Shown here one piece after another: positions 35,709-61,407 of a DNA stretch of 64,000 bases. The notes under the pieces are model-generated. The model was not told the origin of the DNA. It did not search any database and saw only the letters and a program-made list of their open reading frames with translations. Made by a program: the position numbers and the translations under genes. Within the stretch, counting starts at the first letter, position 1. Each line of letters opens with the position of its first letter. Location of the stretch: positions 62,001-126,000 of IMG/VR virus record IMGVR_UViG_3300029267_004162. The stretch is one strand, 5' to 3'.

Positions 35709-36407
35709 TTAGCCATTAACCGACTCAATCAAGATATGTAGGTCATTGAGATCGGTGAATTCATGATCTGGCCTGTGGGTGCCAATATCATAAATGCGGT
35801 TGGCTCTATTTACCCACCCACTACAAATACCCGCCCGAATTGCGCCCCCTACGTCACTATATAGTGAATCACCAACATGAATGACGTGTTCACGTCGCCA
35901 GCCAGTAAATTCAAGTGCATCCTCGAAAATGCGTGGATTGGGCTTGTAAGAACGAGAGTCCTCGGATGTTACCACCCCAGTTACTTGAATATCATGCAGT
36001 GCCAACGCCTGATCCACATCGGCTCGGTCAGTATTTGATACTATGCAAATAGGCGTGCAAAAATTCGCCAGAAAAGACCTCACTTCTGGCTGCAACGGTG
36101 GATTCTTACAAGACACGACTAAGGTTTTGACGTATGGAACTGGATCAAGATCAACGATACCTATCGCTGCCATCGTTTCCCGTAACGTTTGCACCTCGAT
36201 CTCGAATAGCGTCAGGAAGTTGCCATCGTTATGATAGTCTACGGCCCTCAAAAACTTTTCACCCCAGGCAACACTAAGCTTGGATGGTGACAATTCGATG
36301 CCCGTATCTCTAATGATGGTGGCACATACCATCTCAACAGCGGCGCGATCACCAGCCGTGAGCGTCCCATACATATCCATGAATACGCCATCAAATCTCG
36401 TCATCAT
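35709..36407 (-). CDS. HAD-superfamily (subfamily IA) hydrolase
   Basis: DMYGTL, VSN, YKPNPRIF, HVGDSLYSDVGGA motifs. Confidence 0.9.
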   Translation of the reverse strand: MMTRFDGVFMDMYGTLTAGDRAAVEMVCATIIRDTGIELSPSKLSVAWGEKFLRAVDYHNDGNFLTLFEIEVQTLRETMAAIGIVDLDPVPYVKTLVVSCKNPPLQPEVRSFLANFCTPICIVSNTDRADVDQALALHDIQVTGVVTSEDSRSYKPNPRIFEDALEFTGWRREHVIHVGDSLYSDVGGAIRAGICSGWVNRANRIYDIGTHRPDHEFTDLNDLHILIESVNG

Positions 36408-36427
36408 CTCGTCATCATCTCGTCATC
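36395..36427. repeat. Three exact 11-bp tandem copies (ATCTCGTCATC) across the HAD start codon
   Basis: Read directly: 36395-36405, 36406-36416, 36417-36427. Confidence 0.9.
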
Positions 36428-36437
36428 GAGTAACAGT

Positions 36438-36812
36438 TTATGGTCTGGATTCATCAATTGCCTTTTGTTCTACCACTTGCGGACCTTTGTTGACTAGACG
36501 AATGCAACACTTTTTAAATTTCTTTCCGCTACCACAGGGACACGGGCGATTACGCAAACAATTCTTAACCTGTCTTATCTCGGTTACATCTTTATTCTGA
36601 CAAGCCTTGTCATATGCTTTCTGTAAACGAGGCTTTAAAGCCCCCTCGTCTTCTTCCCCTATAAACTCTCTCGTTACCCTTTTGGCTTCTGTTATATTTC
36701 CGGCGACTTCACTTTCAGAGGTGGTACCGCCCGGACTGGTTCTGTCAACGCTGGTTTCTTCATGCATTTTTGTTGTTCCTTTATTCGTTGTTTTTCTGCT
36801 TGTTTTAACCAA
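36438..36812 (-). CDS. SEC-C motif protein (start uncertain; overlaps TGT 3' end)
   Basis: RNRPCPCGSGKKFKKCC. Confidence 0.75.
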   Translation of the reverse strand: MVKTSRKTTNKGTTKMHEETSVDRTSPGGTTSESEVAGNITEAKRVTREFIGEEDEGALKPRLQKAYDKACQNKDVTEIRQVKNCLRNRPCPCGSGKKFKKCCIRLVNKGPQVVEQKAIDESRP

Positions 36813-38560
36813 ATTTTCTTGGCTTTTTGCTGCAGAGTCTTCTGTACCTTGGCATTCCCTTTTCCTCTACCGGTTCGTCCCCTCTTTTTCTCCACTTCTC
36901 TTTTAGAGAATTTGTGTTTAGTGGATAATTTACCAGTTGCAGTGGCCCGCAAATCCTGGATGTATGCCAAATAGCCCTTGTTATTTTTAACCTCTTTCCA
37001 CCAATTTTGGACTAACGGAGGAAACTGACCTAAAACTGCCGGGTCATCCATATTCATATAGAGAGGCATCAATTCTAAATTACTTCCCTCCCTAACCCCC
37101 GTCATCACTGGGTCTCCATCTTCATCCATTAAGTCCCGATCTTCACTAAACACGATATCAGGTTTTAAACTAGACTTCTTTCGAGTTTCAGCGTAATACA
37201 AACTACGAAATTCCTGAAAACCCGCATCCACCCCATATTCGATGGTGTGTTCTACATAAGCCACTAATTTGGCTGAACTAGTCCCGAAAGTCTTTTTGAC
37301 CCATTGATAATAATCTTCATAATCACTTTTTTTGGCCGTCTCATGAAGTAAGTTAGTGAAATTATTTAATGCCCAGATGTTATGAATAGCTAAATACGGA
37401 CCAATTTTAGTATTCTCGCTCCAGAAGGGGTCCATAAATCCAAGAGAGGAACAAACAGGACAAGCACATGTGGTTGGCAACCGACCCATGTGAGCAAAAT
37501 CATTCAGCGGAACTCCGTGGTTGTTTTTCTTGGTTTTTCCGTCTAGATGAAATTCAGTTCCAATCCGATCCGTTGAAATATATCCAGAGGGGTGTTGGAT
37601 GAGTATTTTACGGTGACCTACCCCTAGAAACTGACTGCTGGAATCGCAAGTAACCCGAATTTCCATTCGTTTAGCGAACCACGCCATAGCAGGCATAATC
37701 TTGATTCCCGATACTCCCAGGACATGGACCCATTTGGCCTCTCTTTCTGTTGCTACCAAAAGGGCTCCTCTTAGGGCGGAAGCAAAATCTTGAGAATCCC
37801 CAGAACCTGCACTAGCCCACCCAAAGAATTGTGGGCGATCAACCACATCAATCCATCGCCTTTGATCATCTGGGGTACAACTATGCACGATGTTAAAGAC
37901 CTTTAGATCAGGTCTCATGTTAGCAGTGTAACAATCAGCGAATTGCGATTGTAAATGAGAGAGGGTAGAAAAAATATCTTTTTGTCCAAAATCAGTTCCC
38001 TCTCGGGGAGGCGCGTCCAAAATCAAAGCATAGTCAGAGGTTTGGTTTTGCCATTCAATAACTGCCTTCGGATCAAGATAATCAACTGTTCTAACTCGAA
38101 GTTGATACCCTCCGGAATCCGTCATATGCACCAGGCCTGATGTCTTAGCCCAGTTGGTTCTCTGGTTTTTTCTAATTCCATATGCAGCAGAACTAAGAAT
38201 GATCCCGACTTGCCTGTTAATAGATCCTTCTTCACAGAAAGGGTCTAATTCATGAACTACGTCAAAATCCCGTGGGTCAAACGGAGCCATGGAAGGGTAA
38301 GAAACAGAACTCCGACCAAAATTGTTTAAGAACACGGTGCGATCGGGAAGATCGTATATTTGAATTTGGTTGTTTAGTTTATGATAACCCACTCCGAACC
38401 GAGAAACATGATCTATTTGTTTCTTAAACCGTACTCCAATAGACGGGTGAAAGGAAACTTCCGCTCCAGCCATGATCCAAGTAAGTCCACCCGGATCGGC
38501 GTCAGTGCCAAAAGTCCCTAGGATTTCGTCTCGTCGAGAAGTCAAAATTACTGCCTGCAT
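36692..38560 (-). CDS. TGT/DpdA-like 7-deazaguanine transglycosylase
   Basis: HMTDSGGYQ, ILDAPP, WVHVLGVSG, VTCDSSS and zinc site CACPVC...HN; N- and C-terminal extensions. Confidence 0.85.
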   Translation of the reverse strand: MQAVILTSRRDEILGTFGTDADPGGLTWIMAGAEVSFHPSIGVRFKKQIDHVSRFGVGYHKLNNQIQIYDLPDRTVFLNNFGRSSVSYPSMAPFDPRDFDVVHELDPFCEEGSINRQVGIILSSAAYGIRKNQRTNWAKTSGLVHMTDSGGYQLRVRTVDYLDPKAVIEWQNQTSDYALILDAPPREGTDFGQKDIFSTLSHLQSQFADCYTANMRPDLKVFNIVHSCTPDDQRRWIDVVDRPQFFGWASAGSGDSQDFASALRGALLVATEREAKWVHVLGVSGIKIMPAMAWFAKRMEIRVTCDSSSQFLGVGHRKILIQHPSGYISTDRIGTEFHLDGKTKKNNHGVPLNDFAHMGRLPTTCACPVCSSLGFMDPFWSENTKIGPYLAIHNIWALNNFTNLLHETAKKSDYEDYYQWVKKTFGTSSAKLVAYVEHTIEYGVDAGFQEFRSLYYAETRKKSSLKPDIVFSEDRDLMDEDGDPVMTGVREGSNLELMPLYMNMDDPAVLGQFPPLVQNWWKEVKNNKGYLAYIQDLRATATGKLSTKHKFSKREVEKKRGRTGRGKGNAKVQKTLQQKAKKIWLKQAEKQRIKEQQKCMKKPALTEPVRAVPPLKVKSPEI

Positions 38561-38571
38561 TGGTTCTTGCT

Positions 38572-39189
38572 TCAGCGACCAGAGTTAACCAGATCAATTC
38601 TAGATGATCCGGCCAGAGCACCGGTCTCCACAAGCGTAAATTCCCGAGCGGCCCTCGGTATACAAAGATTGTGTGCCGCATTACCATCGCGATCCAAGAC
38701 CGCGTGGCAATTGGGGCACGTCCATTTCCTCATACATAACGATAAAGAATCAACTTTAAACCCACAGTGATGACAAATCTTACTGGAGGGGTAAAACCGA
38801 TCCCGAACTACGAGAGATGATCCAGAGGCTTCGCATTTGTAAATTAATTGCCTGCGGAATTCACTCCAAGAGGCATCACTGATATGGCGGGCTAGAGCGT
38901 GGTTTTTGATCATGCCGGCCACGTTTAGGTCCTCGATGCAAATCTCTTGGAACATGTTGGACAACTGAGTAATCAGTTTGTGCAGGAAGTCTTGGCGGTG
39001 ATTGGTGATTCGCCAGTGATGACGAGCCAGTGTCGCTGCTGATTTCCTTCTGTTGTTAGAACCTTTTTGTTTACGGCTATGACGGCGAGACAACTTACGA
39101 AGTTTAGTCAAACCCTTGCCTAAAGCTTTGATGGGTTTCTTCTTGATGAACCTCCGAAAAGATGGGGTCGGAAAGTCTCTCGTTTACAT
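38572..39189 (-). mobile_element. tnpB: Truncated TnpB (IS200/IS605/IS607 OrfB) remnant
   Basis: SRKQKGSNNRRK, ICIEDLNVAGM, FYPSSKICHHCG, WTCPNCHAVLDRDGNAA; RuvC-I and N-terminal domains missing; in-frame ATG-TAA at 39189-39184. Confidence 0.85.
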
Positions 39190-39222
39190 TTGAACCCTCC
39201 TCGGCTAATTCTGGCACCCCAT

Positions 39223-40485
39223 TTACGCAACCACGCCTTGGCACATTACTGATTTGATTGGATTCCAGTCAGCCCCAACATCCGTCAGGTAGTACACTCC
39301 CGCTCCTTCAATCTTTGTTGTACATTCATACAAATTTTTAACGGATTCAGGGATGTCCTGACCAAAAGCTGTTACAAGGCAAATATCTTCGGAGGCTTCG
39401 GATGCCAAGAAATGGCCGTTTTTTGTTATCCCGGCGGTATTGGAAATTGCCCATTTATTTGTATCTTGGGGTGGAGTGCTCACTAAATATTGTAAGGCTG
39501 GGATACCATTTTTGATCAAAACCGAAGCAAAATACTTCGAGCGAACCGGGAATTCCTTCATGCCCTCCCATAACCCAAAGAGCAATTCAGTATAACTAAA
39601 AGCGCAAGCCGCCACCTGGGCTTCAGTAGGATGTGGCATACGGGTAGTGTATTCTAAGAAATACATTTCCCCATCCGGAGTAACCATACAGTTGATATCG
39701 AAAAACCCTACGTGTCCTCTTATTTTGACCTCATGTGCTCGCATGAGATCGCCAATCGGAAAGGACAGTTGATCCAATTCCGTCCAGGTCATAAATTGAC
39801 CACAAGATCCTGATTCCCCAGTCATCTCAGTGGACCTGATCTGTTTAGGGTACCGTCGCTTGTATTCTTGAATCATGGTAAAAGGTTGTAGGAATTTGCC
39901 CTCTGCCCCCATGAACCCACCGAATCCAACTTCTTCACCTTCTATAAACTCTTGGTATACGGCACCCTGAAAATTAGTGGTCTTCAAAAACAAATCGCGT
40001 TTGTACAGCACCATTGTTCGGATAGAATTGCCCGGAAATCGTTGCTTAACCACATACTGATTTTCATCGAACTTAACCACTACTTTATCACCAGGAAACA
40101 TTTGTGCTTTATCTGGATCAGTAGTCGTCCGAGGAATTTTTATCCAGGGAGCCAACTTTTTGATAAACATAGCAGCAAACCCACGATCTAGTTCTAGTCT
40201 AGCACCAAGATCAACTGCTCGAATTTGCTGAGCTTCCCCCAGATTTGAAAAATGGTCTACGTAAAAAATCAAATCCGAAGGTCGGGAAATCTCTTTTACG
40301 CCCTCCCCCAACTGCCGCCAAGTCGAATACCACCGGATAGACATTCCAGGAGGTAAAACTTTTTCTTCGTCTGGGGGTTCGGGGGCCACTACATGAAAAA
40401 ACACCTCCACCGTGTCTTTAATCAAAGCAATAGCCAAAGCAAAGGGACACCAGTCCCCCACGAAATGAACTCTCCGAGTAGTCAT
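39223..40485 (-). CDS. PurD-like ATP-grasp amine ligase
   Basis: LELDRGFA, VVVKFD, QEFIEGEEVG, QEYKR, TGESG, GFFDINCM, YFLEYTTRMPHPT: divergent GAR-synthetase pattern. Confidence 0.8.
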   Translation of the reverse strand: MTTRRVHFVGDWCPFALAIALIKDTVEVFFHVVAPEPPDEEKVLPPGMSIRWYSTWRQLGEGVKEISRPSDLIFYVDHFSNLGEAQQIRAVDLGARLELDRGFAAMFIKKLAPWIKIPRTTTDPDKAQMFPGDKVVVKFDENQYVVKQRFPGNSIRTMVLYKRDLFLKTTNFQGAVYQEFIEGEEVGFGGFMGAEGKFLQPFTMIQEYKRRYPKQIRSTEMTGESGSCGQFMTWTELDQLSFPIGDLMRAHEVKIRGHVGFFDINCMVTPDGEMYFLEYTTRMPHPTEAQVAACAFSYTELLFGLWEGMKEFPVRSKYFASVLIKNGIPALQYLVSTPPQDTNKWAISNTAGITKNGHFLASEASEDICLVTAFGQDIPESVKNLYECTTKIEGAGVYYLTDVGADWNPIKSVMCQGVVA

Positions 40486-41216
40486 ACCAATTCCTTTGGT
40501 TTAACATCATACTCAGTTGAATCCTGGCCTTCAGCAGTCATAAAAGCCCAGTGCCTACCTCGACAAGCAAAACAACCACCACAATGATCTGATTTGCTAT
40601 TTTGAAAACAAGACACCGTCGTTTCCAATGGAGCCCCCAATGCTCTACCCAAACGAACAACTGCGGCTTTGTCTAGCCCAGCTAACGCATCGATCATTCC
40701 AAAATGGACTGCTGTTCCAGGGTGATTTTCGTGATAAGGTGTAAAATCGTTGTACAAAGAGCCGATTTCTCCACGGAATTCACTAGAATCCATAGTATCA
40801 AACACACCCCCAAGAAATTCATTCGTAAAATCTTTAGTGGCCGGGTCATTCATTCCAGAACCCCCAGTATCAGCATCCATCTCGCCAGTGTATACTTTTT
40901 CCACACCTATCTTTTCAGCCATCGCCAAAGCAAGGGAGTATTGAAATAACTTGAACCCAGGAATGTAATTACTTCCTGGAATTTGCAACTTGTCCAAAAC
41001 ATCCCGCATATCCACACGAGTCAATTTAAGACCAAGAAGACATGCAATTCTATTCTGCGATTCAACGACCTTTTCTTGTCCCCATAAATTCAGCGATAAC
41101 AATAGGGGGTAGGCCCCGGCTTTCTGGAGCATAGCAGCTACCACAGTGGAATCCAAACCGCCGCTAAAAAGTACCAGAGATTTGTAAACTTGCGTATGTG
41201 TATGCGTGTGGGTCAA
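40482..41216 (-). CDS. Divergent QueC paralogue (PP-loop ATPase)
   Basis: SGGLDS and SCF...HCGGCFAC retained; canonical VPxRN replaced by IPGFK and YPDCR absent. Confidence 0.8.
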   Translation of the reverse strand: MTHTHTHTQVYKSLVLFSGGLDSTVVAAMLQKAGAYPLLLSLNLWGQEKVVESQNRIACLLGLKLTRVDMRDVLDKLQIPGSNYIPGFKLFQYSLALAMAEKIGVEKVYTGEMDADTGGSGMNDPATKDFTNEFLGGVFDTMDSSEFRGEIGSLYNDFTPYHENHPGTAVHFGMIDALAGLDKAAVVRLGRALGAPLETTVSCFQNSKSDHCGGCFACRGRHWAFMTAEGQDSTEYDVKPKELV

Positions 41217-41932
41217 ACGAGAGCCTCCGGAGTATCTTTACTCTTCTTAACCATAGCGATGAAATGCAAACAGCATTCTATTTGATTACGGGGAAACCCC
41301 AAGTGTTCAACACAATACCGAATTACTTGATCGGAATCTAAAGATTTAGTGTGCGTCCCAGCGCGACCCATGATGGTAAGTTTACCTCCACGAGTACCAG
41401 CCACCAACTGCTCCATGGATTCCTTCACAAGTCTCCTGGTGAAAATAAACCGGGAAGTGATGTGTTCTTGGGTTAGACAATAGGCCAGTTGTTTTCCATA
41501 CACTTCAGCATCAAAAGAATCGGCGTGAAATTTGTACAGGGTTTGGGGTGTAGTCGCAACACCCTGACGAATAACAGCACCATTGCATAGGGAAGCCCTC
41601 CCCGGAATAGAATAATCTTGTTCGACGCCCCAAAGATCAAAAGCAAGGAACATAAAAGAGGGGTCGATAATCCAGCGGTGGTCCACCAGCAAAATTGAGT
41701 GGGTCAATTGCCCCTTCACTTCCACAACTACTAGTTGGCCTTGTCCCAACAGTTGTTGTGCCTGTCGGGCTAAGTGAAAGCAGTTTCCTGATTTGGCCCC
41801 GTAGGCCAAATCTTTTTGAGGATAATCCGGGGTGCCTCTTCCCTTGGCAAGAGCCGTGATCTTAGAGATGGTCTCAAATAACCAGGTTTGAGGATTCAGT
41901 TTTTCTACGGCCTGTTGCAAAAAAGAAGTCAT
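41213..41932 (-). CDS. Arylamine N-acetyltransferase / transglutaminase-like Cys-His-Asp protein
   Basis: SGNCFHL...THSILLVD...WIIDPSF triad spacing like the NAT family. Confidence 0.6.
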   Translation of the reverse strand: MTSFLQQAVEKLNPQTWLFETISKITALAKGRGTPDYPQKDLAYGAKSGNCFHLARQAQQLLGQGQLVVVEVKGQLTHSILLVDHRWIIDPSFMFLAFDLWGVEQDYSIPGRASLCNGAVIRQGVATTPQTLYKFHADSFDAEVYGKQLAYCLTQEHITSRFIFTRRLVKESMEQLVAGTRGGKLTIMGRAGTHTKSLDSDQVIRYCVEHLGFPRNQIECCLHFIAMVKKSKDTPEALV

Positions 41933-41936
41933 GGTA

Positions 41937-42398
41937 TCACCTCAAATGAGGTTCGAGGGTGGGGAAAGTACCAAATCTATCTGATGCCCATTGTGCCCAC
42001 TCCTCACTGTGTCTCTGTGCGAATGGTTGGATGGCTATGCCCCCACGAGAATTAAAACACCCAATTACTTCAACATACTTGGGGGTCAACAAACTCATCA
42101 AATCTTCGACTATGACGTTGACAACTGCTTCGTGGAAAGCTCCATGATTTCTAAAACTGCCCAGGTAAAGCTTCAGAGCTTTGCTCTCGACTAAACGCTC
42201 CTGAGGAACATAATTGATGTAGATCGTACCCCAATCAGGTTGACTGGTGACGGGACAAATACTGGAGAATTCTGAACAGATCAAGCGAATCCAAAATACC
42301 GACTCCCGTGATGGGCTGGGTACATGTTCTAGAAGTTCAGGATTGTACTGTTGAGTCTGGGAACCAAATCCGGAATTACCTGAGCCTAAATGATTCAT
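41937..42398 (-). CDS. queF: NADPH-dependent preQ0 reductase (type I QueF)
   Basis: EFSSICPVTSQPD, QueF motif ESKALKLY, FHE, FNSRGGI. Confidence 0.93.
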   Translation of the reverse strand: MNHLGSGNSGFGSQTQQYNPELLEHVPSPSRESVFWIRLICSEFSSICPVTSQPDWGTIYINYVPQERLVESKALKLYLGSFRNHGAFHEAVVNVIVEDLMSLLTPKYVEVIGCFNSRGGIAIQPFAQRHSEEWAQWASDRFGTFPTLEPHLR

Positions 42399-42717
42399 TA
42401 TCTTCTGCCAACCTTTCCACTAAACTAGCGACTCGTTTGCAAATCCATTGAATATCATGATCAGTTAACTGCGATGGATCAGCTCGACCCAGTAAAAGCA
42501 GTTTTTGAAGTCGCTGCCATATAGCTTTATGAACAGCGGACTCAACGTGTTCTGAAAGCAGACGGATACTACCGGCTTCCCCCGGAACCATGTCATTACA
42601 GGTGAATAGGCAGTCCTTGTACAGACACCCGTAGTATTCACCACGTGGATTCCATGCGAAATGATCCCGGTTACAAATTGGACAACTAACAGCGGTCATT
42701 TCAGTCCTGATTGACAA
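42376..42717 (-). CDS. Small zinc-ribbon protein
   Basis: CPIC...YYGCLYKDC. Confidence 0.55.
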   Translation of the reverse strand: MSIRTEMTAVSCPICNRDHFAWNPRGEYYGCLYKDCLFTCNDMVPGEAGSIRLLSEHVESAVHKAIWQRLQKLLLLGRADPSQLTDHDIQWICKRVASLVERLAEDNESFRLR

Positions 42718-42750
42718 GAGGGATTGTTGTGATACATCAACTTCCTTTTA

Positions 42751-43539
42751 CTAACGATTAGGACACAAAATCAGACCACTGCGAATCTCCAGTTCTTCCA
42801 GCGTAACAGTGTAGTTCTGAAAGTTGGCCTTGCGAGGTGTATCCTGGGGCAAAAGATAAGCTGTCGGAGTTTCCCCTCTGATCATCACGATTTTCCAAAA
42901 AGCGGAGGGAACACAGTGGGGTTCATCTGCTCCAGGTAATTGAGGCATGCTATCGTCTTCGAATAGTGGGCCGGTGAGAATCCAGGTTTCCCCATGTTCC
43001 CATGTCAGTTCTCGCACGTAGATTTCCAATCCTAGCCAAGTTCCCTGATTGAGACCAGGATACTGAGGTGCGATGTTGCTCAGATAGTTTACTTGAGAAG
43101 CATCTTTGGACCCCCGGAAAGAAGCCAATGGAGCTAGGTGACCCCGATCAAAATCACTGGCTCCCTTGTAGTCGGCTGGTTCCAAAGTTTCAGCCGGATC
43201 CAATAGAGGATCACTTCTCCACACCCGAGCTAAATCCAGTGTTCCTCTTGTTTTACTGGGGGTTAAGTGATAAGCCACCCAGTCTGCTAGCTTGGTTTCG
43301 ATGTTAGCACTAAGGGCGTAAGATTCACGCACAACAATGACATTGGTTTCGGGGGTGCCGATTGGACAACCAAAAAGGAAATGTTCACATCGAATCTGAC
43401 CGGTGGGGAAGGGGATGGGAGCAACAGCCATTAAAGGCTTGGGGGTAGAAACGGTGAGCGTCAAGAATGCCCGGATGAGGATGATGAGACAAATCGAGCA
43501 CACAATCCACGTACAAGTCCGACGGGGTTTAGTCGACAT
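42751..43539 (-). CDS. DNA/RNA non-specific endonuclease (NucA/EndA family) with N-terminal membrane anchor
   Basis: ADWVAY, FDRGHLAP, NYLSNIAPQ..LNQGTW..LE, VPSAFWK; start moved to MSTKPRR. Confidence 0.9.
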   Translation of the reverse strand: MSTKPRRTCTWIVCSICLIILIRAFLTLTVSTPKPLMAVAPIPFPTGQIRCEHFLFGCPIGTPETNVIVVRESYALSANIETKLADWVAYHLTPSKTRGTLDLARVWRSDPLLDPAETLEPADYKGASDFDRGHLAPLASFRGSKDASQVNYLSNIAPQYPGLNQGTWLGLEIYVRELTWEHGETWILTGPLFEDDSMPQLPGADEPHCVPSAFWKIVMIRGETPTAYLLPQDTPRKANFQNYTVTLEELEIRSGLILCPNR

Positions 43540-44068
43540 GAAGTTTCTCCCAACCGGTTTCTGGATAGTACACGCGATTGCCATCAAAAATGTAAATTAG
43601 CATATAGTCGTCCCCCAAGTTGCTATTGGTGAAACATCTGTGTCCGCCTTCATAAATCAACAGGTAATTCCCACCGCCAATCCACATCCAGCTATCAGTC
43701 ACGAAATTCCACAGATACAGTTCTTTGCTAAACCACGTGTAATAGCTGTATTTCTTGCATTTTTTATAACCCGGCGGTATTACATATACTGAATCATCCC
43801 TGGTCACTTCTAAAACTGGAGTCGTTTCTATCTTTTGACACTTCCTCATTTTCAGACACTGTTTACAGGTAACGCGCTGCCAATGGGGGCTGGTACGACT
43901 CTCACTTGCCCAAAACTCCAACCCACATACCGCAAAATCATACGAGCCATAATTAACTACCCTCCCGCCTTGATATCCTCGGTCTCTACGTTTCCGCTTA
44001 TGTATAATCTTTCGCTTCTCTAAAGGCTGCGGGCTACTTACCGTCATCTCATTTCCTAACCGGGCCAT
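43529..44068 (-). CDS. Hypothetical protein
   Basis: ORF track; VTCKQC. Confidence 0.5.
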   Translation of the reverse strand: MARLGNEMTVSSPQPLEKRKIIHKRKRRDRGYQGGRVVNYGSYDFAVCGLEFWASESRTSPHWQRVTCKQCLKMRKCQKIETTPVLEVTRDDSVYVIPPGYKKCKKYSYYTWFSKELYLWNFVTDSWMWIGGGNYLLIYEGGHRCFTNSNLGDDYMLIYIFDGNRVYYPETGWEKLHVD

Positions 44069-44717
44069 AGACGGTAGGATCGGTTACCTCGGCTAACCGA
44101 AATGCCTCTCGTCGTTCCACACAGGTTCCACATTTACCGCAATGAGTGACTTGTCCTTTGTAGCATGACCATGTCTCCCCGAAGGGCACGTGTAATTCAT
44201 GACCGAGACGGCATATCCTGGTTTTATCATACCGAAGAAAGGGAGTCCAAATAGGTACCGGATAATAATGACACACATCAGCGATCTGAGACAAGGCTAT
44301 CACAAAGGCTGGTCTACAGTCTGGGTAGATGGAGTGATCCCCAGCGTGAGCAGCATAAGCCACGGCGTCATATTTCTCATTGATGCAACACCCAATAGCG
44401 ATCGATAACATGATCATATTACGATTGGGAACTACCGTGGTCTGCATATTCTTGTCAGCATAATGCCCCTCCGGCACCACCGTTGCTGAATCCATCAAAG
44501 CGTTATCGCCCAAGAGTTGACCCACGGAACGTAAGTCTAAGATATGATGGGGACACTTATACTCGATTGCCAAAGCGGCTGCGGCTTCGATCTCCCGTCG
44601 TCCGTGTTTCTGACCGTAATTGAAGGTCAAACACTGACAAGTATGGCCTTGTGCCAATAAACTGGCCAGAAGTACAGTAGAATCCATCCCACCGGATAGG
44701 GATACAATCACTTTCAC
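44049..44717 (-). CDS. queC: 7-cyano-7-deazaguanine (preQ0) synthase
   Basis: SGGMDS, YGQKH, VVPNRN, YPDCR, TWSCY...HCGKCGTC; GTG start at 44717 with GGAGG SD. Confidence 0.95.
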   Translation of the reverse strand: MKVIVSLSGGMDSTVLLASLLAQGHTCQCLTFNYGQKHGRREIEAAAALAIEYKCPHHILDLRSVGQLLGDNALMDSATVVPEGHYADKNMQTTVVPNRNMIMLSIAIGCCINEKYDAVAYAAHAGDHSIYPDCRPAFVIALSQIADVCHYYPVPIWTPFLRYDKTRICRLGHELHVPFGETWSCYKGQVTHCGKCGTCVERREAFRLAEVTDPTVYGPVRK

Positions 44718-45658
44718 TGGGGTGCCTCCGCCAACATCGGAATTTCCGAGGACACGGCTCGAAGAATATCGCGTTTGTATTCCCCTGCCACATCGGGAGT
44801 CCCCAGGGACAAAGATTTGCACTGCTTTTCATAAGCGGTTTGCATCAGAAACAGGATCATCAACGTTATGGGATCAAACTTCTTAAATCCAGGTAGGGAC
44901 CATACTTCTACCAGACGTAGTTGGTCCGTCTCCTGGAAATATAAGATCAACCCCAGTGGTTTGCCCTCGAATTCGAGTACCAGAGCCTCTGCGTGAATTC
45001 CGGCCAGAATCAAATAGTCCCAACGTGATTTGTTGGTCGTCGCCCATTTGGTAAGAGGGGTCTCTTTTAGAGGCGAAGTAAGATGTTGCAATTCCCCAAA
45101 CCAAAAATCTGGGGTCTTTGGCTGACTTACCACCTTGGGGCTAAACTTTCGCCAGGTCGTTCGAGTATAACGACAATCAGTACCTTTCAAGTGGCTCTCA
45201 AAATCAGAAGCGGCAAGAGGTAAAATCAATTCTGTCTGAGTCGGAATCCCCTCCCCATACAGCAGCTTGATCAGAGATTCAAAATCGGGGCCACTTAAAG
45301 CCAGGAGGTTTCTAGTCAAGCCGAGGTTGTTCAAAGGAAAGACTAGCAGTGGAGTGTAGCCATCATCCTTCATCTCTGATACACGAACAATGCCACTCTG
45401 CTCCCGTTTAGCAATTAGATGAAGGATACCGGGTGGAACATCCAAATTAATAGGGTTTAGGCCCTGAATTCCCCTCATTAAAACATCAGACCATTCTTGG
45501 TGGTGTTCAACCAAAAAACACCGGCCATCACGTTCTACTCGTGTACCTAGCTGGGGACGAGGGGGTTTATCCCGTTTAACAACCAATCGTTTAGATCGTG
45601 TTTTCTTCTTAACGGCTGGTTTTGATGGTAATGACGACGACGTCATGTTATCTCTCAA
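44714..45658 (-). CDS. GNAT/Fem-like acyltransferase-domain protein
   Basis: C-terminal LVLEFEGKPLGLILY...LMILFLMQTAYEKQCKSLSLG...EYKR; GTGA-coupled to queC. Confidence 0.55.
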   Translation of the reverse strand: MRDNMTSSSLPSKPAVKKKTRSKRLVVKRDKPPRPQLGTRVERDGRCFLVEHHQEWSDVLMRGIQGLNPINLDVPPGILHLIAKREQSGIVRVSEMKDDGYTPLLVFPLNNLGLTRNLLALSGPDFESLIKLLYGEGIPTQTELILPLAASDFESHLKGTDCRYTRTTWRKFSPKVVSQPKTPDFWFGELQHLTSPLKETPLTKWATTNKSRWDYLILAGIHAEALVLEFEGKPLGLILYFQETDQLRLVEVWSLPGFKKFDPITLMILFLMQTAYEKQCKSLSLGTPDVAGEYKRDILRAVSSEIPMLAEAPQ

Positions 45659-53208: not shown

Positions 53209-54012
53209 TCACCTCGTACTGGTTGTTCCACTTTTCAGAATACGAAATGGAGGGGTTGTTATGCCCTTTGGATAATACCGCGAGAGAATAGAATAGAATT
53301 GATCTTCATCAGCGTCCCCCTCAATTCTTTCCCCGCCCTTAGAGGTAGTCATTGTGAATGTACCCACATCGGGGTGTTGTATCTCGATTATGCCATCGAA
53401 GAAAACGATGGTTGTGTTTTCTATGGCCATGTCGGCGATATGAATGGCCAGGGGTACCATATCATCAGGGAAGAGTCCAATGATACGGTAGATTCCAAGA
53501 GAGAGCGTTTCAATCCCTGAGCCTAGTTGCTTTTCTCCCTGCGGTCCAACCACCTGAGAGTGAGAAGCAAATGCACGGGTAAACCGGCGGGAAGGAAAAG
53601 TGGTGCCATCCTCTCGAATAGGCTCCACCAGTTTAAAGCTCTCTTCCAACTCGGCATCCGTAATATCTGGCTCGTAAAACCGGGCTCTGAGTTCTTCACT
53701 ATCAGTGGAGTAAAGATCATACTGAATCGTCACTTCAGGAATTTCTTGATCAGGTTCAAGTGGAACTCGATCAAGTGTACAACGATAAATCTGCACCCCC
53801 TTATCGTCGGTGGTTCTTCCAACTGATACACGATAGGTCGGCACCAAGCAATACTCAATTATCTTCTTGAGTAAATGAGCGGGGTTATCCTCCACCACCC
53901 TTGCTTCTGAACGGCTCAGAATCATTCCAGAATCCGTCAACAACCATGGAACTAAAATCATTGCATTTCCTACCCTATAGAGAGATAAACCCGACAGATT
54001 TATACCATTCAA
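53209..54012 (-). CDS. Hypothetical protein (start uncertain)
   Basis: 267-aa ORF. Confidence 0.6.
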   Translation of the reverse strand: MNGINLSGLSLYRVGNAMILVPWLLTDSGMILSRSEARVVEDNPAHLLKKIIEYCLVPTYRVSVGRTTDDKGVQIYRCTLDRVPLEPDQEIPEVTIQYDLYSTDSEELRARFYEPDITDAELEESFKLVEPIREDGTTFPSRRFTRAFASHSQVVGPQGEKQLGSGIETLSLGIYRIIGLFPDDMVPLAIHIADMAIENTTIVFFDGIIEIQHPDVGTFTMTTSKGGERIEGDADEDQFYSILSRYYPKGITTPPFRILKSGTTSTR

Positions 54013-54976
54013 CAGTAGAGATAACTCCTGCTGAGAGGGGCGTCTTTGGTTGATACCCCAATTGAAGTTTAGCTTTACTAATGTCGGCTATGTAATAAGT
54101 TACTTCACCACGAAGAGGATCAGTGAACGTAACGACTGGTTCTTTACCAATGGAGAGACTAAGTAAATTCACCAGATCCCACAAGGTACTACCCCGCCCA
54201 TAGGCAAGGTTGAACGTAGCACCAACTACAGTGCCATGTCTTTTATGATTGGCCAGAAGTGCTCGCATTGCTCTGGTCAACCCATCAATGGCGTCATCGA
54301 TGTAAGTAAAGTCCAAAGTCTTGTTTTTTCCAAAGACTTCGATTGGTTCTCCCTTACTAATTCTCTTAGCAAAGAGGGGGATAACTCGTTCCATTCGTTC
54401 TAAGTCATTGTCATATCGACCATAGACGTTACTGAAACGAACGATAACAAAAGGCAGATCGTAACTCTTATGACAAGCATGGAGCATAGCCTCTCCAGCT
54501 AGTTTGGTAGCCGAGTAGGGACTTTCCTGAGCTTGAATATGAGCGTCGTCTTCCCGAACAGACCTCACTTCAAATTCTGGCTTATTTCCATACACCTCCC
54601 GGGAACTAGCAAAGACAACCGGCGTGTTATGACGACGACACGCCTCGGCCACCCGATAAATAGACATGAAATTAGACACTGCTCTATCAGGATATTCTAC
54701 TAATTCGTGAACTTTGGCATACGCGGCTAAATGAATCACCACGTCAGCCCATTCCATTAGGGGGCTGAGATCAAAAGAGGACTCAGCAATATCGCCTCTG
54801 TAAAAATCTTTTACGACAGCGGATTGGGATAAATCCCACCAAGGAAAACTGTTTTTATCGATACCAATAGCCTGGTATTTCTCCGGACCTTGTTGTTCCA
54901 ACCACCGAATAAGGTTACTACCAATTTGCCCGCTAGCCCCGGTTATCACTACTTTAGTTGGTTCCACTACATTCAC
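53975..54976 (-). CDS. NAD-dependent nucleotide-sugar epimerase/dehydratase (extended SDR)
   Basis: ITGASGQIG, SSREVYG, PYSATK (YxxxK), RFSNVYG, DFTYIDD; start approximate. Confidence 0.9.
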   Translation of the reverse strand: MNVVEPTKVVITGASGQIGSNLIRWLEQQGPEKYQAIGIDKNSFPWWDLSQSAVVKDFYRGDIAESSFDLSPLMEWADVVIHLAAYAKVHELVEYPDRAVSNFMSIYRVAEACRRHNTPVVFASSREVYGNKPEFEVRSVREDDAHIQAQESPYSATKLAGEAMLHACHKSYDLPFVIVRFSNVYGRYDNDLERMERVIPLFAKRISKGEPIEVFGKNKTLDFTYIDDAIDGLTRAMRALLANHKRHGTVVGATFNLAYGRGSTLWDLVNLLSLSIGKEPVVTFTDPLRGEVTYYIADISKAKLQLGYQPKTPLSAGVISTVEWYKSVGFISL

Positions 54977-54978
54977 CC

Positions 54979-55644
54979 TTAAATAGCGCCCCATTTTTGT
55001 AAGCGAACAAACGCATATAAAGCAATGCAACCGGCATCAGCTTCGTGATCCGTTTGGGCTTCAGGAAAGTAATCTCTACTAGTCATTTCATATTGATTTA
55101 GGATCACTGTCTTCCACATAGCGGCTGTGAAGACATCGACAGGTCTTTTAGAAGTGGCTACTATCGCACCAATTAACAGATTAATTGGTTCAATGTCCCC
55201 CGTTGCTTTACCCCGCTTAGAATATCGTTCGATAGCCAATAACTGCGGATTTTGAGCAGTGTGTTTAACACACTTTTTTAACTCTTCCTGGACAACCCGA
55301 AAACCATCATGACAAATGCTTTTCTTAAATTTTTTAGTGGTCTTTAATAAGCCAGAAGCCAAACTCCGGTATTGGTCACTTTCGAAATCCGTGACCTCAA
55401 CCATGTGCCAACCAAAATGTTTAGTACCAGGATCCAATCCCAGAATAATCGTAGGCACCAAAAATTCAACACCTTCCCATAAACCGCGAGAAGGTTGTTC
55501 AGAAGGGGCTGGAAGGTTTAACTCTGATTGCGACTTCGTTTTCTTCTTTACCTTCCCCATGTTACCTTTCTTTTTGGCGAGTTTTTTTGCAGTAAGTTTC
55601 TTTCTTGGTTTGTCTAATTTGTCCTTCGCACCCTGTGGTGGCAC
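54979..55644 (-). CDS. RuvC-like Holliday junction resolvase
   Basis: ILGLDPGTKHFG, LAIE, DHEADA; Lys-rich N-terminal extension. Confidence 0.8.
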   Translation of the reverse strand: MPPQGAKDKLDKPRKKLTAKKLAKKKGNMGKVKKKTKSQSELNLPAPSEQPSRGLWEGVEFLVPTIILGLDPGTKHFGWHMVEVTDFESDQYRSLASGLLKTTKKFKKSICHDGFRVVQEELKKCVKHTAQNPQLLAIERYSKRGKATGDIEPINLLIGAIVATSKRPVDVFTAAMWKTVILNQYEMTSRDYFPEAQTDHEADAGCIALYAFVRLQKWGAI

Positions 55645-60961: not shown

Positions 60962-61407
60962 GTATTTCTCTTGGGTATTAGCATCCAGCCAAGAATGAGA
61001 GGGGCCAAACAGATTAGTAACATGCCACGATTCACGATGAGAGTCCAGATAACAAGCTCATGCATAGCTTTCCACGTCTGAATCACGTTGTTATCGTCGC
61101 GGATTTTAACTTGGTGGATTCTCTGCCAAATTTCTCGTTCAATACAAGTGAATTCTTGCTCAGTCCAAATTTGCGTCGGAGACGGGGTATTGGCGCATAA
61201 CGCAATCGCAGCGTTAATGGAATCCTCTATAATCGCAAACGTTTTATCGTCTATGGATTCCGGAAATTCAATTTTTGCATTACGGATCTCATCCCGTTGT
61301 TCAAACATCTTAAAACGGATGCGGTATCGCAGGAATGGAGCCAGTACGCTTTCGTACAAATAACACACCAACATGTACACACCGATGAAGGCGATAACAA
61401 TGGTCAT
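60958..61407 (-). CDS. Membrane protein
   Basis: Hydrophobic helices at both termini; ATGA coupling. Confidence 0.65.
   Translation of the reverse strand: MTIVIAFIGVYMLVCYLYESVLAPFLRYRIRFKMFEQRDEIRNAKIEFPESIDDKTFAIIEDSINAAIALCANTPSPTQIWTEQEFTCIEREIWQRIHQVKIRDDNNVIQTWKAMHELVIWTLIVNRGMLLICLAPLILGWMLIPKRNT

What the first reader, a model, noticed from the sequence alone, without database searches (positions are those of the whole stretch)
35709..45658. Candidate new 7-deazaguanine hypermodification pathway: preQ1 plus ATP-grasp ligase, NAT-like and GNAT acyltransferases and a second QueC
Seen: one co-oriented run of GNAT-queC ... queF-NAT-like-queC2-ATP-grasp-(tnpB)-TGT-SEC-C-HAD, with start/stop overlaps joining GNAT to queC and NAT-like to queC2 to the ATP-grasp gene. 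Established: QueC makes preQ0, a QueF with the ESKxLKLY motif reduces it to preQ1 (free primary amine), TGT/DpdA enzymes exchange such bases into tRNA or DNA, and phages are known to methylate (DpdM) or formylate (DpdN) preQ1. Inference: the three extra enzymes all belong to families that acylate amines, so this phage may build an aminoacylated or acylated preQ1 base that I do not recognise from described pathways, probably as anti-restriction armour. FolE, QueD and QueE are not in this window.
Basis: partly seen in the sequence, partly recalled or inferred. Interest (0 to 1): 0.9.

Follow-up and report, generated by a model that had tools for sequence, protein, structure and literature searches.

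The report
Jumbo-phage preQ1 locus with orphan ligases
An uncultured 263-kb marine phage carries a complete pathway for the modified guanine base preQ1 and an enzyme that probably swaps it into DNA; four rare amide-bond enzymes sit among these genes and may decorate the base in a new way, but sequence alone cannot prove this.

Summary
Window 35709-45658 is one minus-strand gene run holding a canonical QueC, a canonical QueF and a 622-aa TGT-superfamily transglycosylase. FolE, QueD and QueE lie elsewhere in the same 262,650-bp phage genome, so the phage can make preQ1 itself.

The transglycosylase belongs to a large jumbo-phage family. In 12 of 15 viral loci, that family's gene lies within 10 kb of preQ0-pathway genes.

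The four accessory enzymes hold up to different degrees:
- **ATP-grasp:** a full-length PurD-like ligase (solid).
- **"GNAT":** a FemAB/Acetyltransf_6-type double GNAT (moderate).
- **"NAT-like":** an ORFan with only a low-confidence NAT/transglutaminase-like fold.
- **"Second QueC":** not a canonical QueC. It keeps the ATP loop and zinc site but lacks the residues shown to be essential for preQ0 synthesis.

The four-gene set recurs nowhere. The ATP-grasp and QueC2 each have one known relative, and both relatives sit among deazaguanine genes in other phages. Stop/start overlaps are weak evidence, because 19% of adjacent gene pairs in this genome have them.

Best reading: a preQ1-type DNA modification system (about 0.85) whose side chain is further elaborated by amide-forming enzymes (about 0.4). 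It is a new variant of a known kind and worth an LC-MS test.

The parts
44714..45646 (-). 310-aa FemAB/Acetyltransf_6-like double-GNAT candidate with a Lys/Arg-rich N-terminal tail. The mechanical ORF starts at TTG 45658; the first ATG is at 45646.
   Evidence: PF13480 scores 14.8-16 bits, below the cut-off, but it is the only hit in the genome (E 0.002). ESM Atlas features score 0.93-0.94 to Acetyltransf_6/FemAB/LPG_synthase_C/Mig-14 clusters, and structure TM is 0.53-0.56 to the same families. No PHROG, NCBIfam, PDB or phage tblastn hit.
44049..44717 (-). Canonical QueC (7-cyano-7-deazaguanine synthase). The likely GTG start overlaps the upstream stop (GTGA).
   Evidence: PF06508 198.6 bits; TIGR00364 183 bits, above the 150 cut-off. 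SGGMDS, YGQKHGRRE, VPNRN, YPDC and the C(x)8CxxCxxC motif are all present, matching the signature in PMC13329287.
43529..44068 (-). 179-aa unknown protein with a basic N-terminus and several cysteines.
   Evidence: No significant family hit; sequence.
42751..43587 (-). DNA/RNA non-specific endonuclease.
   Evidence: PF01223 137 bits.
42376..42717 (-). 113-aa unknown protein with a CxxC...C-rich N-terminus.
   Evidence: No family hit; sequence.
41937..42398 (-). Unimodular QueF (NADPH-dependent preQ0 reductase, which makes preQ1).
   Evidence: TIGR03139 139 bits, above the 86.9 cut-off; PF14489 112 bits. The catalytic-Cys context ICPVTSQPD and the NADPH motif ESKALKLY are present.
41213..41932 (-). 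239-aa ORFan, possibly a Cys-His-Asp enzyme of the NAT/transglutaminase/papain-like fold (C51, H78, D90).
   Evidence: No homologue among 5.8 billion proteins. No Pfam, PHROG, NCBIfam, PADLOC or PDB hit. The ESM Atlas model (pLDDT 0.55) matches arylamine N-acetyltransferase clusters at TM 0.61-0.64. The AF2 single-sequence model failed (pLDDT 36), though its helix 51-62 followed by strands 75-83 and 86-89 fits the triad topology. The triad itself is inferred.
40482..41216 (-). QueC2, a non-canonical QueC-family ATP-pyrophosphatase.
   Evidence: PF06508 77 bits, but TIGR00364 only 53 bits against a cut-off of 150. It keeps SGGLDS and C(x)8CxxCxxC. It has WGQE..KVVE in place of YxQxHxxE, IPGFK in place of VPxRN, and no YPDC. 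It is equally distant from QueC, QatC and Cap9 structures. One orthologue with the same losses and insertions lies at L041:13634-14410.
39223..40485 (-). PurD-like ATP-grasp ligase (carboxylate-amine ligase fold).
   Evidence: TIGR00877 E 1e-9 over residues 94-406, but 37.7 bits against a cut-off of 288. PDB PurD 2yw2 E 3e-5. ESM Atlas model pTM 0.80, TM 0.73-0.80 to PurD over the full length, and features 0.97 to viral PurD-like clusters. One homologue is known, P0002 at 36% identity.
39196..39241 (.). 46-nt copy of the 3' end of a 201-aa gene located elsewhere in the genome (187251-187295); a rearrangement scar at the ATP-grasp stop codon.
   Evidence: read laying loose ends, blastn 93-95% identity, and sequence context.
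38572..39111 (-). C-terminal half of a TnpB (RuvC-II/III plus zinc finger). The N-terminal half is absent, so this is presumably a dead remnant.
   Evidence: PF07282 and PF01385 hits. It matches only positions ~259-425 of 458 in Cas12f/TnpB profiles. The open frame reaches only to 39183, and there is no other copy in the genome.
36692..38560 (-). 622-aa TGT-superfamily (arcTGT/DpdA-like) base-exchange enzyme of a jumbo-phage family, with a helical C-terminal extension.
   Evidence: 506 family representatives. Invariant D148-S-G-G, D182, H279, D306 and C365xC367xxC370...H393. 24 of 68 members hit PF01702. The family profile matches arcTGT 1iq8 at E 2e-18, bacterial TGT at 1e-7 to 1e-9 and DpdA 7ui4 at 1e-6. 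The AF2 model (pLDDT 82) gives TGTs and DpdA as the top 7 Foldseek hits. Its relatives are linked to que genes.
36438..36812 (-). Small basic protein with a SEC-C zinc motif; its role is unknown.
   Evidence: PF02810 34.7 bits; sequence.
35709..36407 (-). HAD-superfamily hydrolase, nearest to YjjG-type nucleotidases and type II dehalogenases. Its membership of the pathway is uncertain.
   Evidence: PF00702 60 bits; TIGR01428 and TIGR02254 hits below their cut-offs.

Best explanation
This is the insertion-and-tailoring half of a jumbo-phage 7-deazaguanine DNA-modification system.

**Core pathway (shown by family membership).** FolE, QueD and QueE, encoded elsewhere in the genome, make CDG. The canonical QueC makes preQ0, and the canonical QueF reduces it to preQ1.

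**Insertion step (inferred).** The 622-aa TGT-family enzyme exchanges guanine in phage DNA for the deazaguanine base.

**Tailoring (inferred from fold, position and two independent recurrences).** Four lineage-restricted enzymes are interleaved with these genes: a PurD-like ATP-grasp ligase, the non-canonical QueC2, a FemAB-type GNAT and a possible Cys-His-Asp acyl/amido-transferase. They would build an amide-linked extension on the side chain. The most economical version is ATP-dependent ligation of glycine or another small carboxylate to the aminomethyl group of preQ1, just as PurD ligates glycine to phosphoribosylamine. Further acyl or aminoacyl transfer or amidation by the other three would follow. 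An alternative is ligation at the carboxyl group of CDG.

The product would be a 7-deazaguanine derivative outside the eight described so far, serving as protection against host nucleases. The core is about 0.85 likely; the confidence given here is for the tailoring claim.
For: **Core**
- QueC and QueF pass NCBIfam equivalog cut-offs and carry their catalytic motifs.
- FolE, QueD and QueE are present in the genome.
- The TGT catalytic Asp residues and zinc site are invariant in the family, and the fold is confirmed.
- In 12 of 15 IMG/VR loci, the family's TGT gene lies within 10 kb of FolE/QueD/QueE/QueC homologues. Phage Motura has queC-asnB-TGT-x-queE-x-folE.
- Jumbo-phage TGTs have been predicted to act on DNA (PMC7824862).
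- PA5oct, a jumbo phage linked to this family only through an intermediate member, has DNA that resists restriction enzymes whose sites contain G (PMC12191111).

**Tailoring**
- The accessory genes are interleaved with queC, queF and the TGT gene on one strand.
- Among 5.8 billion proteins, the ATP-grasp has one relative. It lies within about 15 kb of QueE, Gat-QueC and a QueC-like gene in an unrelated phage.
- QueC2 has one orthologue, 9 kb from a TGT of the same family in a distantly related phage that also has FolE.
- PurD chemistry joins a carboxylate to a primary amine, which matches the free amine of preQ1 (established enzymology).
- There is a precedent. DpdN, the predicted preQ1 formylase, is a recruit from the purine-pathway PurN family (PMC10516641). 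No PF00551 domain exists in this genome.
- The FemAB-type fold and the basic tail of the GNAT suit an aminoacyl transfer onto a nucleic-acid-borne amine (inference).
Against: - The four accessory genes never recur as a set.
- The NAT-like and GNAT genes have no detectable relatives, so no co-occurrence test is possible for them.
- The ATP-grasp relative's phage shows no QueF and no TGT of this family in about 41 kb. A shared substrate, if any, therefore need not be preQ1.
- The QueC2 orthologue's 52-kb fragment has no ATP-grasp.
- PurD-like ATP-grasp proteins form several large viral clusters of unknown role, including the T4_Y16D type, so the fold alone does not point to deazaguanines.
- Overlapping starts are common in this genome.
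- A nuclease, two small unknown genes, a dead TnpB piece and a recombination scar interrupt the run, so it is not a clean operon.
- The fold assignments for the GNAT and NAT-like proteins rest on low-confidence models.
- There is no expression, chemistry or DNA-modification data.
Confidence: 0.4

Rival explanations
1. Plain dPreQ1 (or dPreQ0) system with passengers. The phage inserts unmodified preQ1 into DNA, as the DpdA2 of Vibrio phage VH7D does. The ATP-grasp, GNAT, NAT-like ORFan and perhaps QueC2 serve unrelated purposes, such as peptide or protein modification or other host-takeover chemistry, and sit here only because the genome is densely packed.
For: - The accessory set is not conserved. 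Relatives of the TGT family in 15 viral loci and 5 named jumbo phages show only core que genes.
- Viral PurD-like ATP-grasp clusters are widespread with no known link to que genes.
- Overlaps are common.
- The run contains clearly unrelated items: a nuclease, a TnpB remnant and a scar.
- ATP-grasp plus GNAT amidoligase sets that modify proteins are known in jumbo phages (PMC7824862).
Against: - Both accessory genes that have any relative at all find it next to deazaguanine genes.
- QueC2 belongs to a family whose known substrates are 7-deazaguanine carboxylates (PMC13329287).
- Four amide-bond enzymes lie within 6 kb of queC and queF.
Confidence: 0.3
2. Known product, new enzymes. The accessory enzymes make a derivative that is already described. 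One example is fdPreQ1 made by a formate-dependent ATP-grasp, acting like PurT or PurP and replacing the absent DpdN. Another is ADG made by QueC2 stopping at the amide.
For: - There is no PF00551/DpdN-type formyltransferase in the genome.
- There are weak secondary hits to the formate-dependent ligase PurP (NF009783 E 0.02; DUF1297 E 0.2).
- QueC2 keeps its ATP and zinc sites but lacks residues needed for the full CDG-to-preQ0 reaction.
Against: - The PurD similarity is far stronger and covers the full length.
- This reading leaves the GNAT and the NAT-like protein without a role.
- A canonical QueC and QueF are already present, which argues against stopping at ADG.
Confidence: 0.12
3. The target is RNA or protein, not DNA. 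In one version the TGT-family enzyme modifies tRNA, of host or phage, with preQ1 or a derivative. In another, QueC2 conjugates a deazaguanine carboxylate to a protein N-terminus as Cap9 and QatC do, for example to interfere with type IV CBASS or Qat immunity.
For: - The family profile is closest to archaeal tRNA-guanine transglycosylase.
- QueC2 scores as well against QatC as against QueC.
- QueC-family enzymes are known to deazaguanylate proteins (PMC13329287).
Against: - Every phage TGT-family enzyme characterised so far acts on DNA, and a DpdA is found in every phage known to carry 7-deazaguanine DNA (PMC10516641).
- QueC2 has none of the QatC-specific motifs and lacks the conserved QueC core that Cap9 retains.
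- There are no tRNA genes in the window.
- No CD-NTase-like or QatB-like partner was detected.
Confidence: 0.1

Closest known systems
Phage dPreQ1-type DNA modification systems: FolE-QueD-QueE-QueC-QueF plus DpdA, with the tailoring enzymes DpdM (methyl) and DpdN (formyl) (Cui et al. 2023, PMC10516641)
   Same: - A full preQ1 pathway is encoded by the phage.
- A TGT-superfamily enzyme is present for insertion.
- Extra enzymes lie next to queF that could derivatise the aminomethyl group.
- DpdN shows that a purine-pathway enzyme family (PurN) can be recruited for this purpose.
   Different: - There is no DpdN-type (PF00551) domain; DpdM was not tested.
- The candidate tailoring enzymes are of other folds: PurD-like ATP-grasp, FemAB-type GNAT, QueC paralogue and a possible Cys-His-Asp enzyme.
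- tblastn with the transglycosylase found none of the phages reported to carry DpdA3. It belongs to a jumbo-phage family about 500 aa long.
Jumbo-phage deazaguanine systems of the Achromobacter phage Motura and Pseudomonas phage PA5oct type (Iyer et al. 2021, PMC7824862; PMC12191111)
   Same: The same TGT family is present (directly for Motura, through intermediates for PA5oct), the setting is a jumbo phage, and the que genes are clustered or scattered around the replication genes.
   Different: Those phages show only core genes (queC, asnB-like, queE, folE, queD). None has QueF together with the ATP-grasp, GNAT, NAT-like or QueC2 genes in the regions examined.
PurD (phosphoribosylamine-glycine ligase) and viral PurD-like ATP-grasp clusters, including PF26092 T4_Y16D
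   Same: The full-length three-domain PurD architecture, the ATP-grasp hinge motif (QEFIEGEE) and the conserved Lys, Glu and Arg positions are present.
   Different: - It scores 37.7 bits against the 288-bit equivalog cut-off.
- The substrate loops are altered: QEYKR for QDHKR, MTGESG for NTGGMG, and LEYTTRMPHPTE for LEFNxRxGDPE.
- No other purine-pathway gene was seen around it.
QueC family (PF06508): canonical QueC, QatC and Cap9 (Libby et al. 2026, PMC13329287)
   Same: The PP-loop SGGxDS, the C(x)8CxxCxxC zinc site and a QueC-sized single domain are present.
   Different: - QueC2 lacks the canonical substrate residues (the His of YxQxHxxE, RN, YPDC and the zinc-region Tyr).
- It lacks the QatC-specific motifs and extensions.
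- It is not the minimal Cap9 form, which keeps the canonical core.
- Together with L041:13634-14410 it defines a small phage-only subgroup with two shared insertions.
FemABX/MprF/Acetyltransf_6 double-GNAT transferases, including the tRNA-dependent amide-forming enzymes of nucleoside-antibiotic pathways (recalled from the literature; not tested here)
   Same: The predicted double-GNAT architecture and a C-terminal Acetyltransf_6-like segment are present.
   Different: The match is below every curated cut-off. The donor (aminoacyl-tRNA or acyl-CoA) and the acceptor are unknown. There is an unusual basic N-terminal tail.

Membership tests
Canonical QueC (preQ0 synthase; PF06508 cluster 1 / TIGR00364) | Score above the TIGR00364 equivalog cut-off (150.3 bits) | tested here: met
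   QueC at 44049-44717 scores 183 bits. QueC2 at 40482-41216 scores only 53 bits and so does not meet this feature.
Canonical QueC (preQ0 synthase; PF06508 cluster 1 / TIGR00364) | The substrate and catalytic motifs YxQxHxxE, VPxRN and YPDC, and the zinc-region Tyr (mutagenesis in PMC13329287) | tested here: not met
   This row is for QueC2, which has WGQE--KVVE, IPGFK, no YPDC, and Phe in place of the zinc-region Tyr. The other QueC (44049-44717) has all of these motifs.
QueC superfamily (PF06508) | The SGGxDS PP-loop and the C(x)8CxxCxxC zinc site | tested here: met
   Both QueC and QueC2 have them. PF06508 scores are 198.6 and 77 bits against a cut-off of 22.
QatC / Cap9 protein-deazaguanylating QueC paralogues | For QatC: the specific motifs (RxRxxxF/Y, HP, P(x)4TK, C(x)19CGxCxxRR) and N- and C-terminal extensions. 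For Cap9: a minimal ~185-aa form with the canonical core, next to a CD-NTase. | tested here: not met
   QueC2 is 244 aa with a canonical-type zinc motif, no QatC motifs and no canonical core. NF041925 scores 40 bits against a cut-off of 280. No CD-NTase or Qat partner was found.
Unimodular QueF (TIGR03139) | Score above the cut-off, the catalytic Cys, and the E(S/L)K(S/A)hK(L/Y)(Y/F/W) NADPH motif | tested here: met
   139 bits against a cut-off of 86.9; ICPVTSQPD and ESKALKLY are present.
TGT superfamily (tRNA/DNA-guanine transglycosylases) | The catalytic Asp in DSGGxQ, the substrate and nucleophile Asp residues, the CxCxxC...H zinc site and the TIM-barrel fold | tested here: met
   The invariant columns are D148/S/G/G, D182, D306 and C365/C367/C370/H393. 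Foldseek to TGTs and DpdA gives E 4e-10 to 2e-6. The family profile matches arcTGT at E 2e-18. The protein alone is below the PF01702 cut-off (13 bits against 26.3).
DpdA (DNA-guanine transglycosylase) subfamilies bDpdA and DpdA1-4 | Activity on DNA rather than tRNA, and assignment to a named subfamily | not testable with these tools
   The family profile hits DpdA 7ui4 at 1e-6, weaker than its hit to arcTGT. tblastn found no DpdA3-bearing phages. DNA as the target is inferred from the literature.
PurD (phosphoribosylamine-glycine ligase, TIGR00877) | Equivalog score (288 bits), and a purine-pathway role with glycine and PRA as substrates | tested here: not met
   It scores 37.7 bits, and the substrate loops are altered. 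The PurD-like fold is met (TM 0.73-0.80).
GNAT / FemAB-like (PF13480 Acetyltransf_6) | Pfam gathering score (22 bits) and the double-GNAT fold | tested here: inconclusive
   It scores 14.8-16 bits. The ESM features (0.93-0.94) and structure (TM 0.53-0.56) consistently point to this clan, but the model pLDDT is only 0.57.
Arylamine N-acetyltransferase (PF00797) / transglutaminase-like core (PF01841) | An HMM match and a Cys-His-Asp triad on the papain-like fold | tested here: inconclusive
   Neither family hits at E<=10. The ESM model (pLDDT 0.55) has TM 0.61-0.64 to NAT clusters. AF2 failed. C51, H78 and D90 are plausible only by position.
DpdN (preQ1 formyltransferase, PurN superfamily PF00551) | Presence of a PF00551 domain near the que genes | tested here: not met
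   There is no PF00551 match anywhere in the 262,650-bp genome at E<=1.

The most novel reading that the evidence does not exclude
The phage replaces guanine in its DNA with a 7-deazaguanine that carries an amino-acyl or short peptidyl amide on the preQ1 aminomethyl group, for example glycyl-preQ1, a nucleobase analogue of glycinamide ribonucleotide. A recruited PurD homologue and a tRNA-dependent Fem-type transferase would build it. A new QueC subfamily and a Cys-His-Asp enzyme would then process it further. This would be a ninth class of natural 7-deazaguanine, and the first case of an ATP-grasp or Fem-type enzyme tailoring a DNA base.
Probability: 0.25. Interest if true: 0.85.

Novelty: new variant of a known kind. 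Interest (0 to 1): 0.6.

Why it matters
Eight natural 7-deazaguanine DNA bases are known. Each new one has revealed new enzymology and new ways for phages to escape restriction, CRISPR and glycosylase defences.

This locus gives a concrete, testable candidate for a further derivative. It offers four enzymes that can be expressed, a defined free-amine or carboxylate acceptor, and a plausible analogy to the first steps of purine synthesis.

The work also defines three things of independent use:
- a small phage-only QueC subfamily that has lost the preQ0-synthase residues;
- evidence tying a large jumbo-phage TGT family (506 representatives) firmly to que genes;
- a second uncharacterised deazapurine cluster in another phage.

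If the accessory genes turn out to be passengers, the locus is an ordinary dPreQ1 system.

Tried and rejected
**Searches that found nothing**
1. Megablast of the whole region, and tblastn of the ATP-grasp and the GNAT, against 50,697 phage records gave no match.
2. The search for related loci in IMG/VR with the ATP-grasp, alone and as a 2-sequence alignment, found nothing.
3. The NAT-like protein has no homologue and no PF00797 or PF01841 signal. Its AF2 single-sequence model was unusable at pLDDT 36, so no fold search was run on it. PDB sequence searches for the NAT-like and GNAT proteins gave only noise.
4. No preQ1 riboswitch or other Rfam family reached threshold in the window, and there are no tRNA genes.
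5. PADLOC gave no defence-system assignment beyond weak QatC/QueC hits for QueC2 and the TnpB piece.

**Leads that went nowhere**
6. Contexts of the three closest TGT relatives were contigs too short to use.
7. The 268-aa protein beside the ATP-grasp relative (L011) is not a TGT by hhalign.
8. GARS_A searches in five jumbo phages carrying the TGT family found only weak hits far from the TGT gene.
9. The sigma-70 promoter and terminator scan showed no enrichment and was not used.

**Readings considered and rejected**
10. QueC2 as a spare preQ0 synthase: its catalytic motifs are missing.
11. The overlaps as proof of an operon: the background rate is 19%.
12. The four sequencing runs as independent confirmation: identical contig sizes suggest shared data.

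Full report
**What is there**

The window is positions 62001-126000 of a 262,650-bp IMG/VR virus record that CheckV rates complete, so this is a jumbo phage. The same sequence occurs in sediment and seawater metagenome runs.

Between 35709 and 45658 every sizeable ORF lies on the minus strand. In order of transcription these are:
- a 310/314-aa protein;
- QueC;
- a 179-aa unknown;
- a non-specific endonuclease;
- a 113-aa unknown;
- QueF;
- a 239-aa protein;
- a second QueC-family protein (QueC2);
- a 420-aa ATP-grasp protein;
- the C-terminal half of a TnpB;
- a 622-aa TGT-like protein;
- a small SEC-C protein;
- a HAD hydrolase.

I measured how common such overlaps are. With a simple gene set of 320 ORFs, 53 of 284 same-strand neighbour pairs (19%) permit a 4-nt or 1-nt overlap. 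The overlaps therefore say little about function.

**The core pathway**

- **QueC (44049-44717).** It exceeds the NCBIfam equivalog cut-off (183 against 150 bits). It has every motif that Libby et al. 2026 showed to be required: SGGxDS, YxQxHxxE, VPxRN, YPDC and C(x)8CxxCxxC.
- **QueF.** It exceeds its cut-off (139 against 87 bits). It shows the catalytic cysteine context and the ESKALKLY NADPH motif of unimodular, reductase-type QueF.
- **FolE, QueD and a QueE-like radical SAM protein.** They lie 45-105 kb away in the same genome.

The phage can therefore make preQ1 from GTP on its own.

**The transglycosylase**

The 622-aa protein gets only marginal TGT hits by itself. An exhaustive HMMER search found 506 family representatives. 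In an alignment of 68 of them, the invariant columns are exactly the TGT catalytic set: D-S-G-G, two further Asp, and CxCxxC...H.

- 24 of the 68 members hit PF01702.
- The family profile matches archaeosine TGT at 2e-18, bacterial and eukaryotic TGT at about 1e-8, and the DNA enzyme DpdA at 1e-6.
- An AlphaFold model (pLDDT 82) retrieves only TGTs and DpdA as significant Foldseek hits.

Relatives occur in named jumbo phages. In Achromobacter phage Motura the gene sits in queC-asnB-TGT-x-queE-x-folE. In 12 of 15 IMG/VR loci it lies within 10 kb of FolE, QueD, QueE or QueC homologues.

DNA as the target is an inference. It rests on three things:
- the rule that phages with 7-deazaguanine DNA carry a DpdA-type enzyme (PMC10516641);
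- the prediction made for Motura-type jumbo phages (PMC7824862);
- the G-site restriction resistance of PA5oct, a phage linked to this family only through intermediate members.

I could not assign the protein to DpdA1-4. tblastn did not reach the phages reported to carry DpdA3.

**The accessory enzymes**

*ATP-grasp.* This is a full-length PurD look-alike. It matches TIGR00877 at E 1e-9 over residues 94-406 and PDB PurD at 3e-5. The ESM Atlas model (pTM 0.80) has TM 0.73-0.80 to PurD. It is far below the PurD equivalog cut-off and its substrate loops are altered, so it is PurD-like and not PurD. Several large viral clusters of PurD-like proteins exist, including the T4_Y16D type, so the fold is not in itself tied to deazaguanines.

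*The 310-aa protein.* It consistently resembles Acetyltransf_6/FemAB/MprF-type double GNATs in ESM features and structure, and weakly in Pfam. It has a strongly basic N-terminal tail.

*The 239-aa protein.* This is an ORFan. Only a low-confidence ESM model resembles arylamine N-acetyltransferase, and AF2 failed. A Cys at the start of a predicted helix, followed by His and Asp on the next strands, would fit the NAT, transglutaminase or papain fold. That fold is also used by amidases and transglutaminases, so 'acylates amines' is not established for this protein.

*QueC2.* It keeps the ATP loop and the zinc site. It has lost the His of YxQxHxxE, the RN of VPxRN, YPDC and the zinc-region Tyr. Alanine substitutions at the corresponding positions abolish QueC function. 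It also lacks the QatC motifs and the conserved core that Cap9 keeps. It is therefore a distinct QueC-family ATP-pyrophosphatase whose substrate or nucleophile has changed.

**Recurrence**

- **ATP-grasp.** It has one relative among 5.8 billion proteins, at 36% identity. That gene lies in another phage downstream of a DNA polymerase, within about 15 kb of a QueE homologue, a Gat-QueC fusion, a QueC-like gene, a GT2 glycosyltransferase, a second radical SAM enzyme and a small phosphoribosyltransferase-like protein. No QueF, no TGT of this family and no relative of the GNAT or NAT-like proteins was found in about 41 kb there.
- **QueC2.** It has one true orthologue, at 32% identity with the same motif losses and the same two insertions. 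This lies in a 52-kb fragment of a distantly related phage, 9 kb from a TGT of the same family and on the same contig as FolE. That fragment has no ATP-grasp.
- **GNAT and NAT-like proteins.** No relatives were found.

So the module as a whole is unique to this phage. The two components that can be tested are each found again among deazaguanine genes.

**Mechanism proposed**

The most economical chemistry is amide formation on the primary amine that QueF creates. PurD joins glycine to the amine of phosphoribosylamine through an acyl phosphate, and a PurD-like enzyme could do the same with preQ1. There is a precedent for borrowing purine-pathway enzymes for exactly this position: DpdN, the predicted preQ1 formylase, is a PurN-family protein. 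This genome has no such domain.

A Fem-type transferase could add a second residue, from aminoacyl-tRNA or acyl-CoA. QueC2 could amidate or ligate a carboxylate. The Cys-His-Asp protein could transfer or trim an acyl group.

The ATP-grasp relative's phage shows no QueF, so an alternative must be kept open: the carboxyl group of CDG is activated and joined to an amine. Whether tailoring happens on the free base or on DNA cannot be decided here. None of these steps is shown. I put the tailoring model at about 0.4 and the core dPreQ-type DNA modification at about 0.85.

**Rivals**

- The accessory genes are passengers (about 0.3).
- They make an already known derivative by new enzymes, for example fdPreQ1 through a formate-dependent ATP-grasp (about 0.12).
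- The target is tRNA or a protein rather than DNA (about 0.1).

**Comparison with what is known, and novelty**

The locus is a member of the known class of phage 7-deazaguanine systems. The accessory enzyme set is not described in the literature I could search. I rate it a new variant of a known kind. It is interesting enough for a bench test, but it currently rests on gene position, fold-level inference and two single-instance recurrences.

**Limits**

- Two of the four fold assignments rest on low-confidence models.
- The phage is uncultured, and no expression or chemical data exist.
- The four sequencing runs that hold the region share contig sizes and may not be independent.

Noticed in passing
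window 38572-39183 (-): Only the C-terminal ~40% of a TnpB (RuvC-II/III and zinc finger) is present, wedged between the ATP-grasp stop codon and the TGT start codon. There is no N-terminal half, no room for an omega-RNA, and no second copy in the genome.
   Followed up: partly
window 39196-39241; genome 187251-187295: A 46-nt segment covering the ATP-grasp stop codon is a 93-95% identical copy of the 3' end of a 201-aa gene 86 kb away, which lies next to a DPPF-motif methyltransferase-like ORF. The last ~6 codons of the ATP-grasp fall inside this copy, so this looks like a recombination scar. The ATP-grasp tail runs 11 residues past the last residues that align with its only homologue.
   Followed up: partly
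window 53975-55030 and 61404-62510 (-): An NAD-dependent sugar epimerase/dehydratase and a UDP-GlcNAc 2-epimerase lie upstream on the same strand, among large unknown ORFs (267-880 aa) and a clamp loader. This could be a sugar-nucleotide pathway for virion or DNA glycosylation.
   Followed up: no
window 42751-43587 (-): A non-specific DNA/RNA endonuclease is embedded between queC and queF. This would fit degradation of unmodified host DNA while the phage's own modified DNA is spared, but that is speculation.
   Followed up: no
L047:3398-18303 (= L011); Logan, JGI and ENA contigs up to about 105-113 kb: A second phage has an uncharacterised deazapurine cluster: a QueE homologue, Gat-QueC, a QueC-like gene with an SSGIDS loop, a GT2 glycosyltransferase, a 314-aa radical SAM enzyme, a small PRTase-like protein, several unknowns and the ATP-grasp homologue. 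These lie beside an intein-bearing DNA polymerase A and type II topoisomerase genes.
   Followed up: partly
L041:13634-14410 (IMGVR_UViG_3300024262_004288): This is an orthologue of QueC2. Together the two define a phage-only QueC subgroup (YxPG[FY]xLF in place of VPxRN, with two shared insertions). Here it lies between a RecA-like gene and unknown, CxxCxxCC, histidine-phosphatase and metallophosphatase genes.
   Followed up: partly
L009, L010, L014, L016 (phages Lauda, GR7B, PhiXhv-15, NCTB): In several cultured jumbo phages the TGT-family gene sits in a conserved replication block (primase ... TGT ... sigma factor ... SSB/RecA) and is annotated 'hypothetical'. Few or no que genes lie within about 8-10 kb (PhiXhv-15 has a QueD-like gene). 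Their DNA-modification status may be worth checking.
   Followed up: no
window 45550-45646, 43970-44068, 36700-36812 (-): The GNAT candidate, the 179-aa unknown and the SEC-C protein all begin with Lys/Arg-rich segments, which suggests nucleic-acid binding.
   Followed up: no
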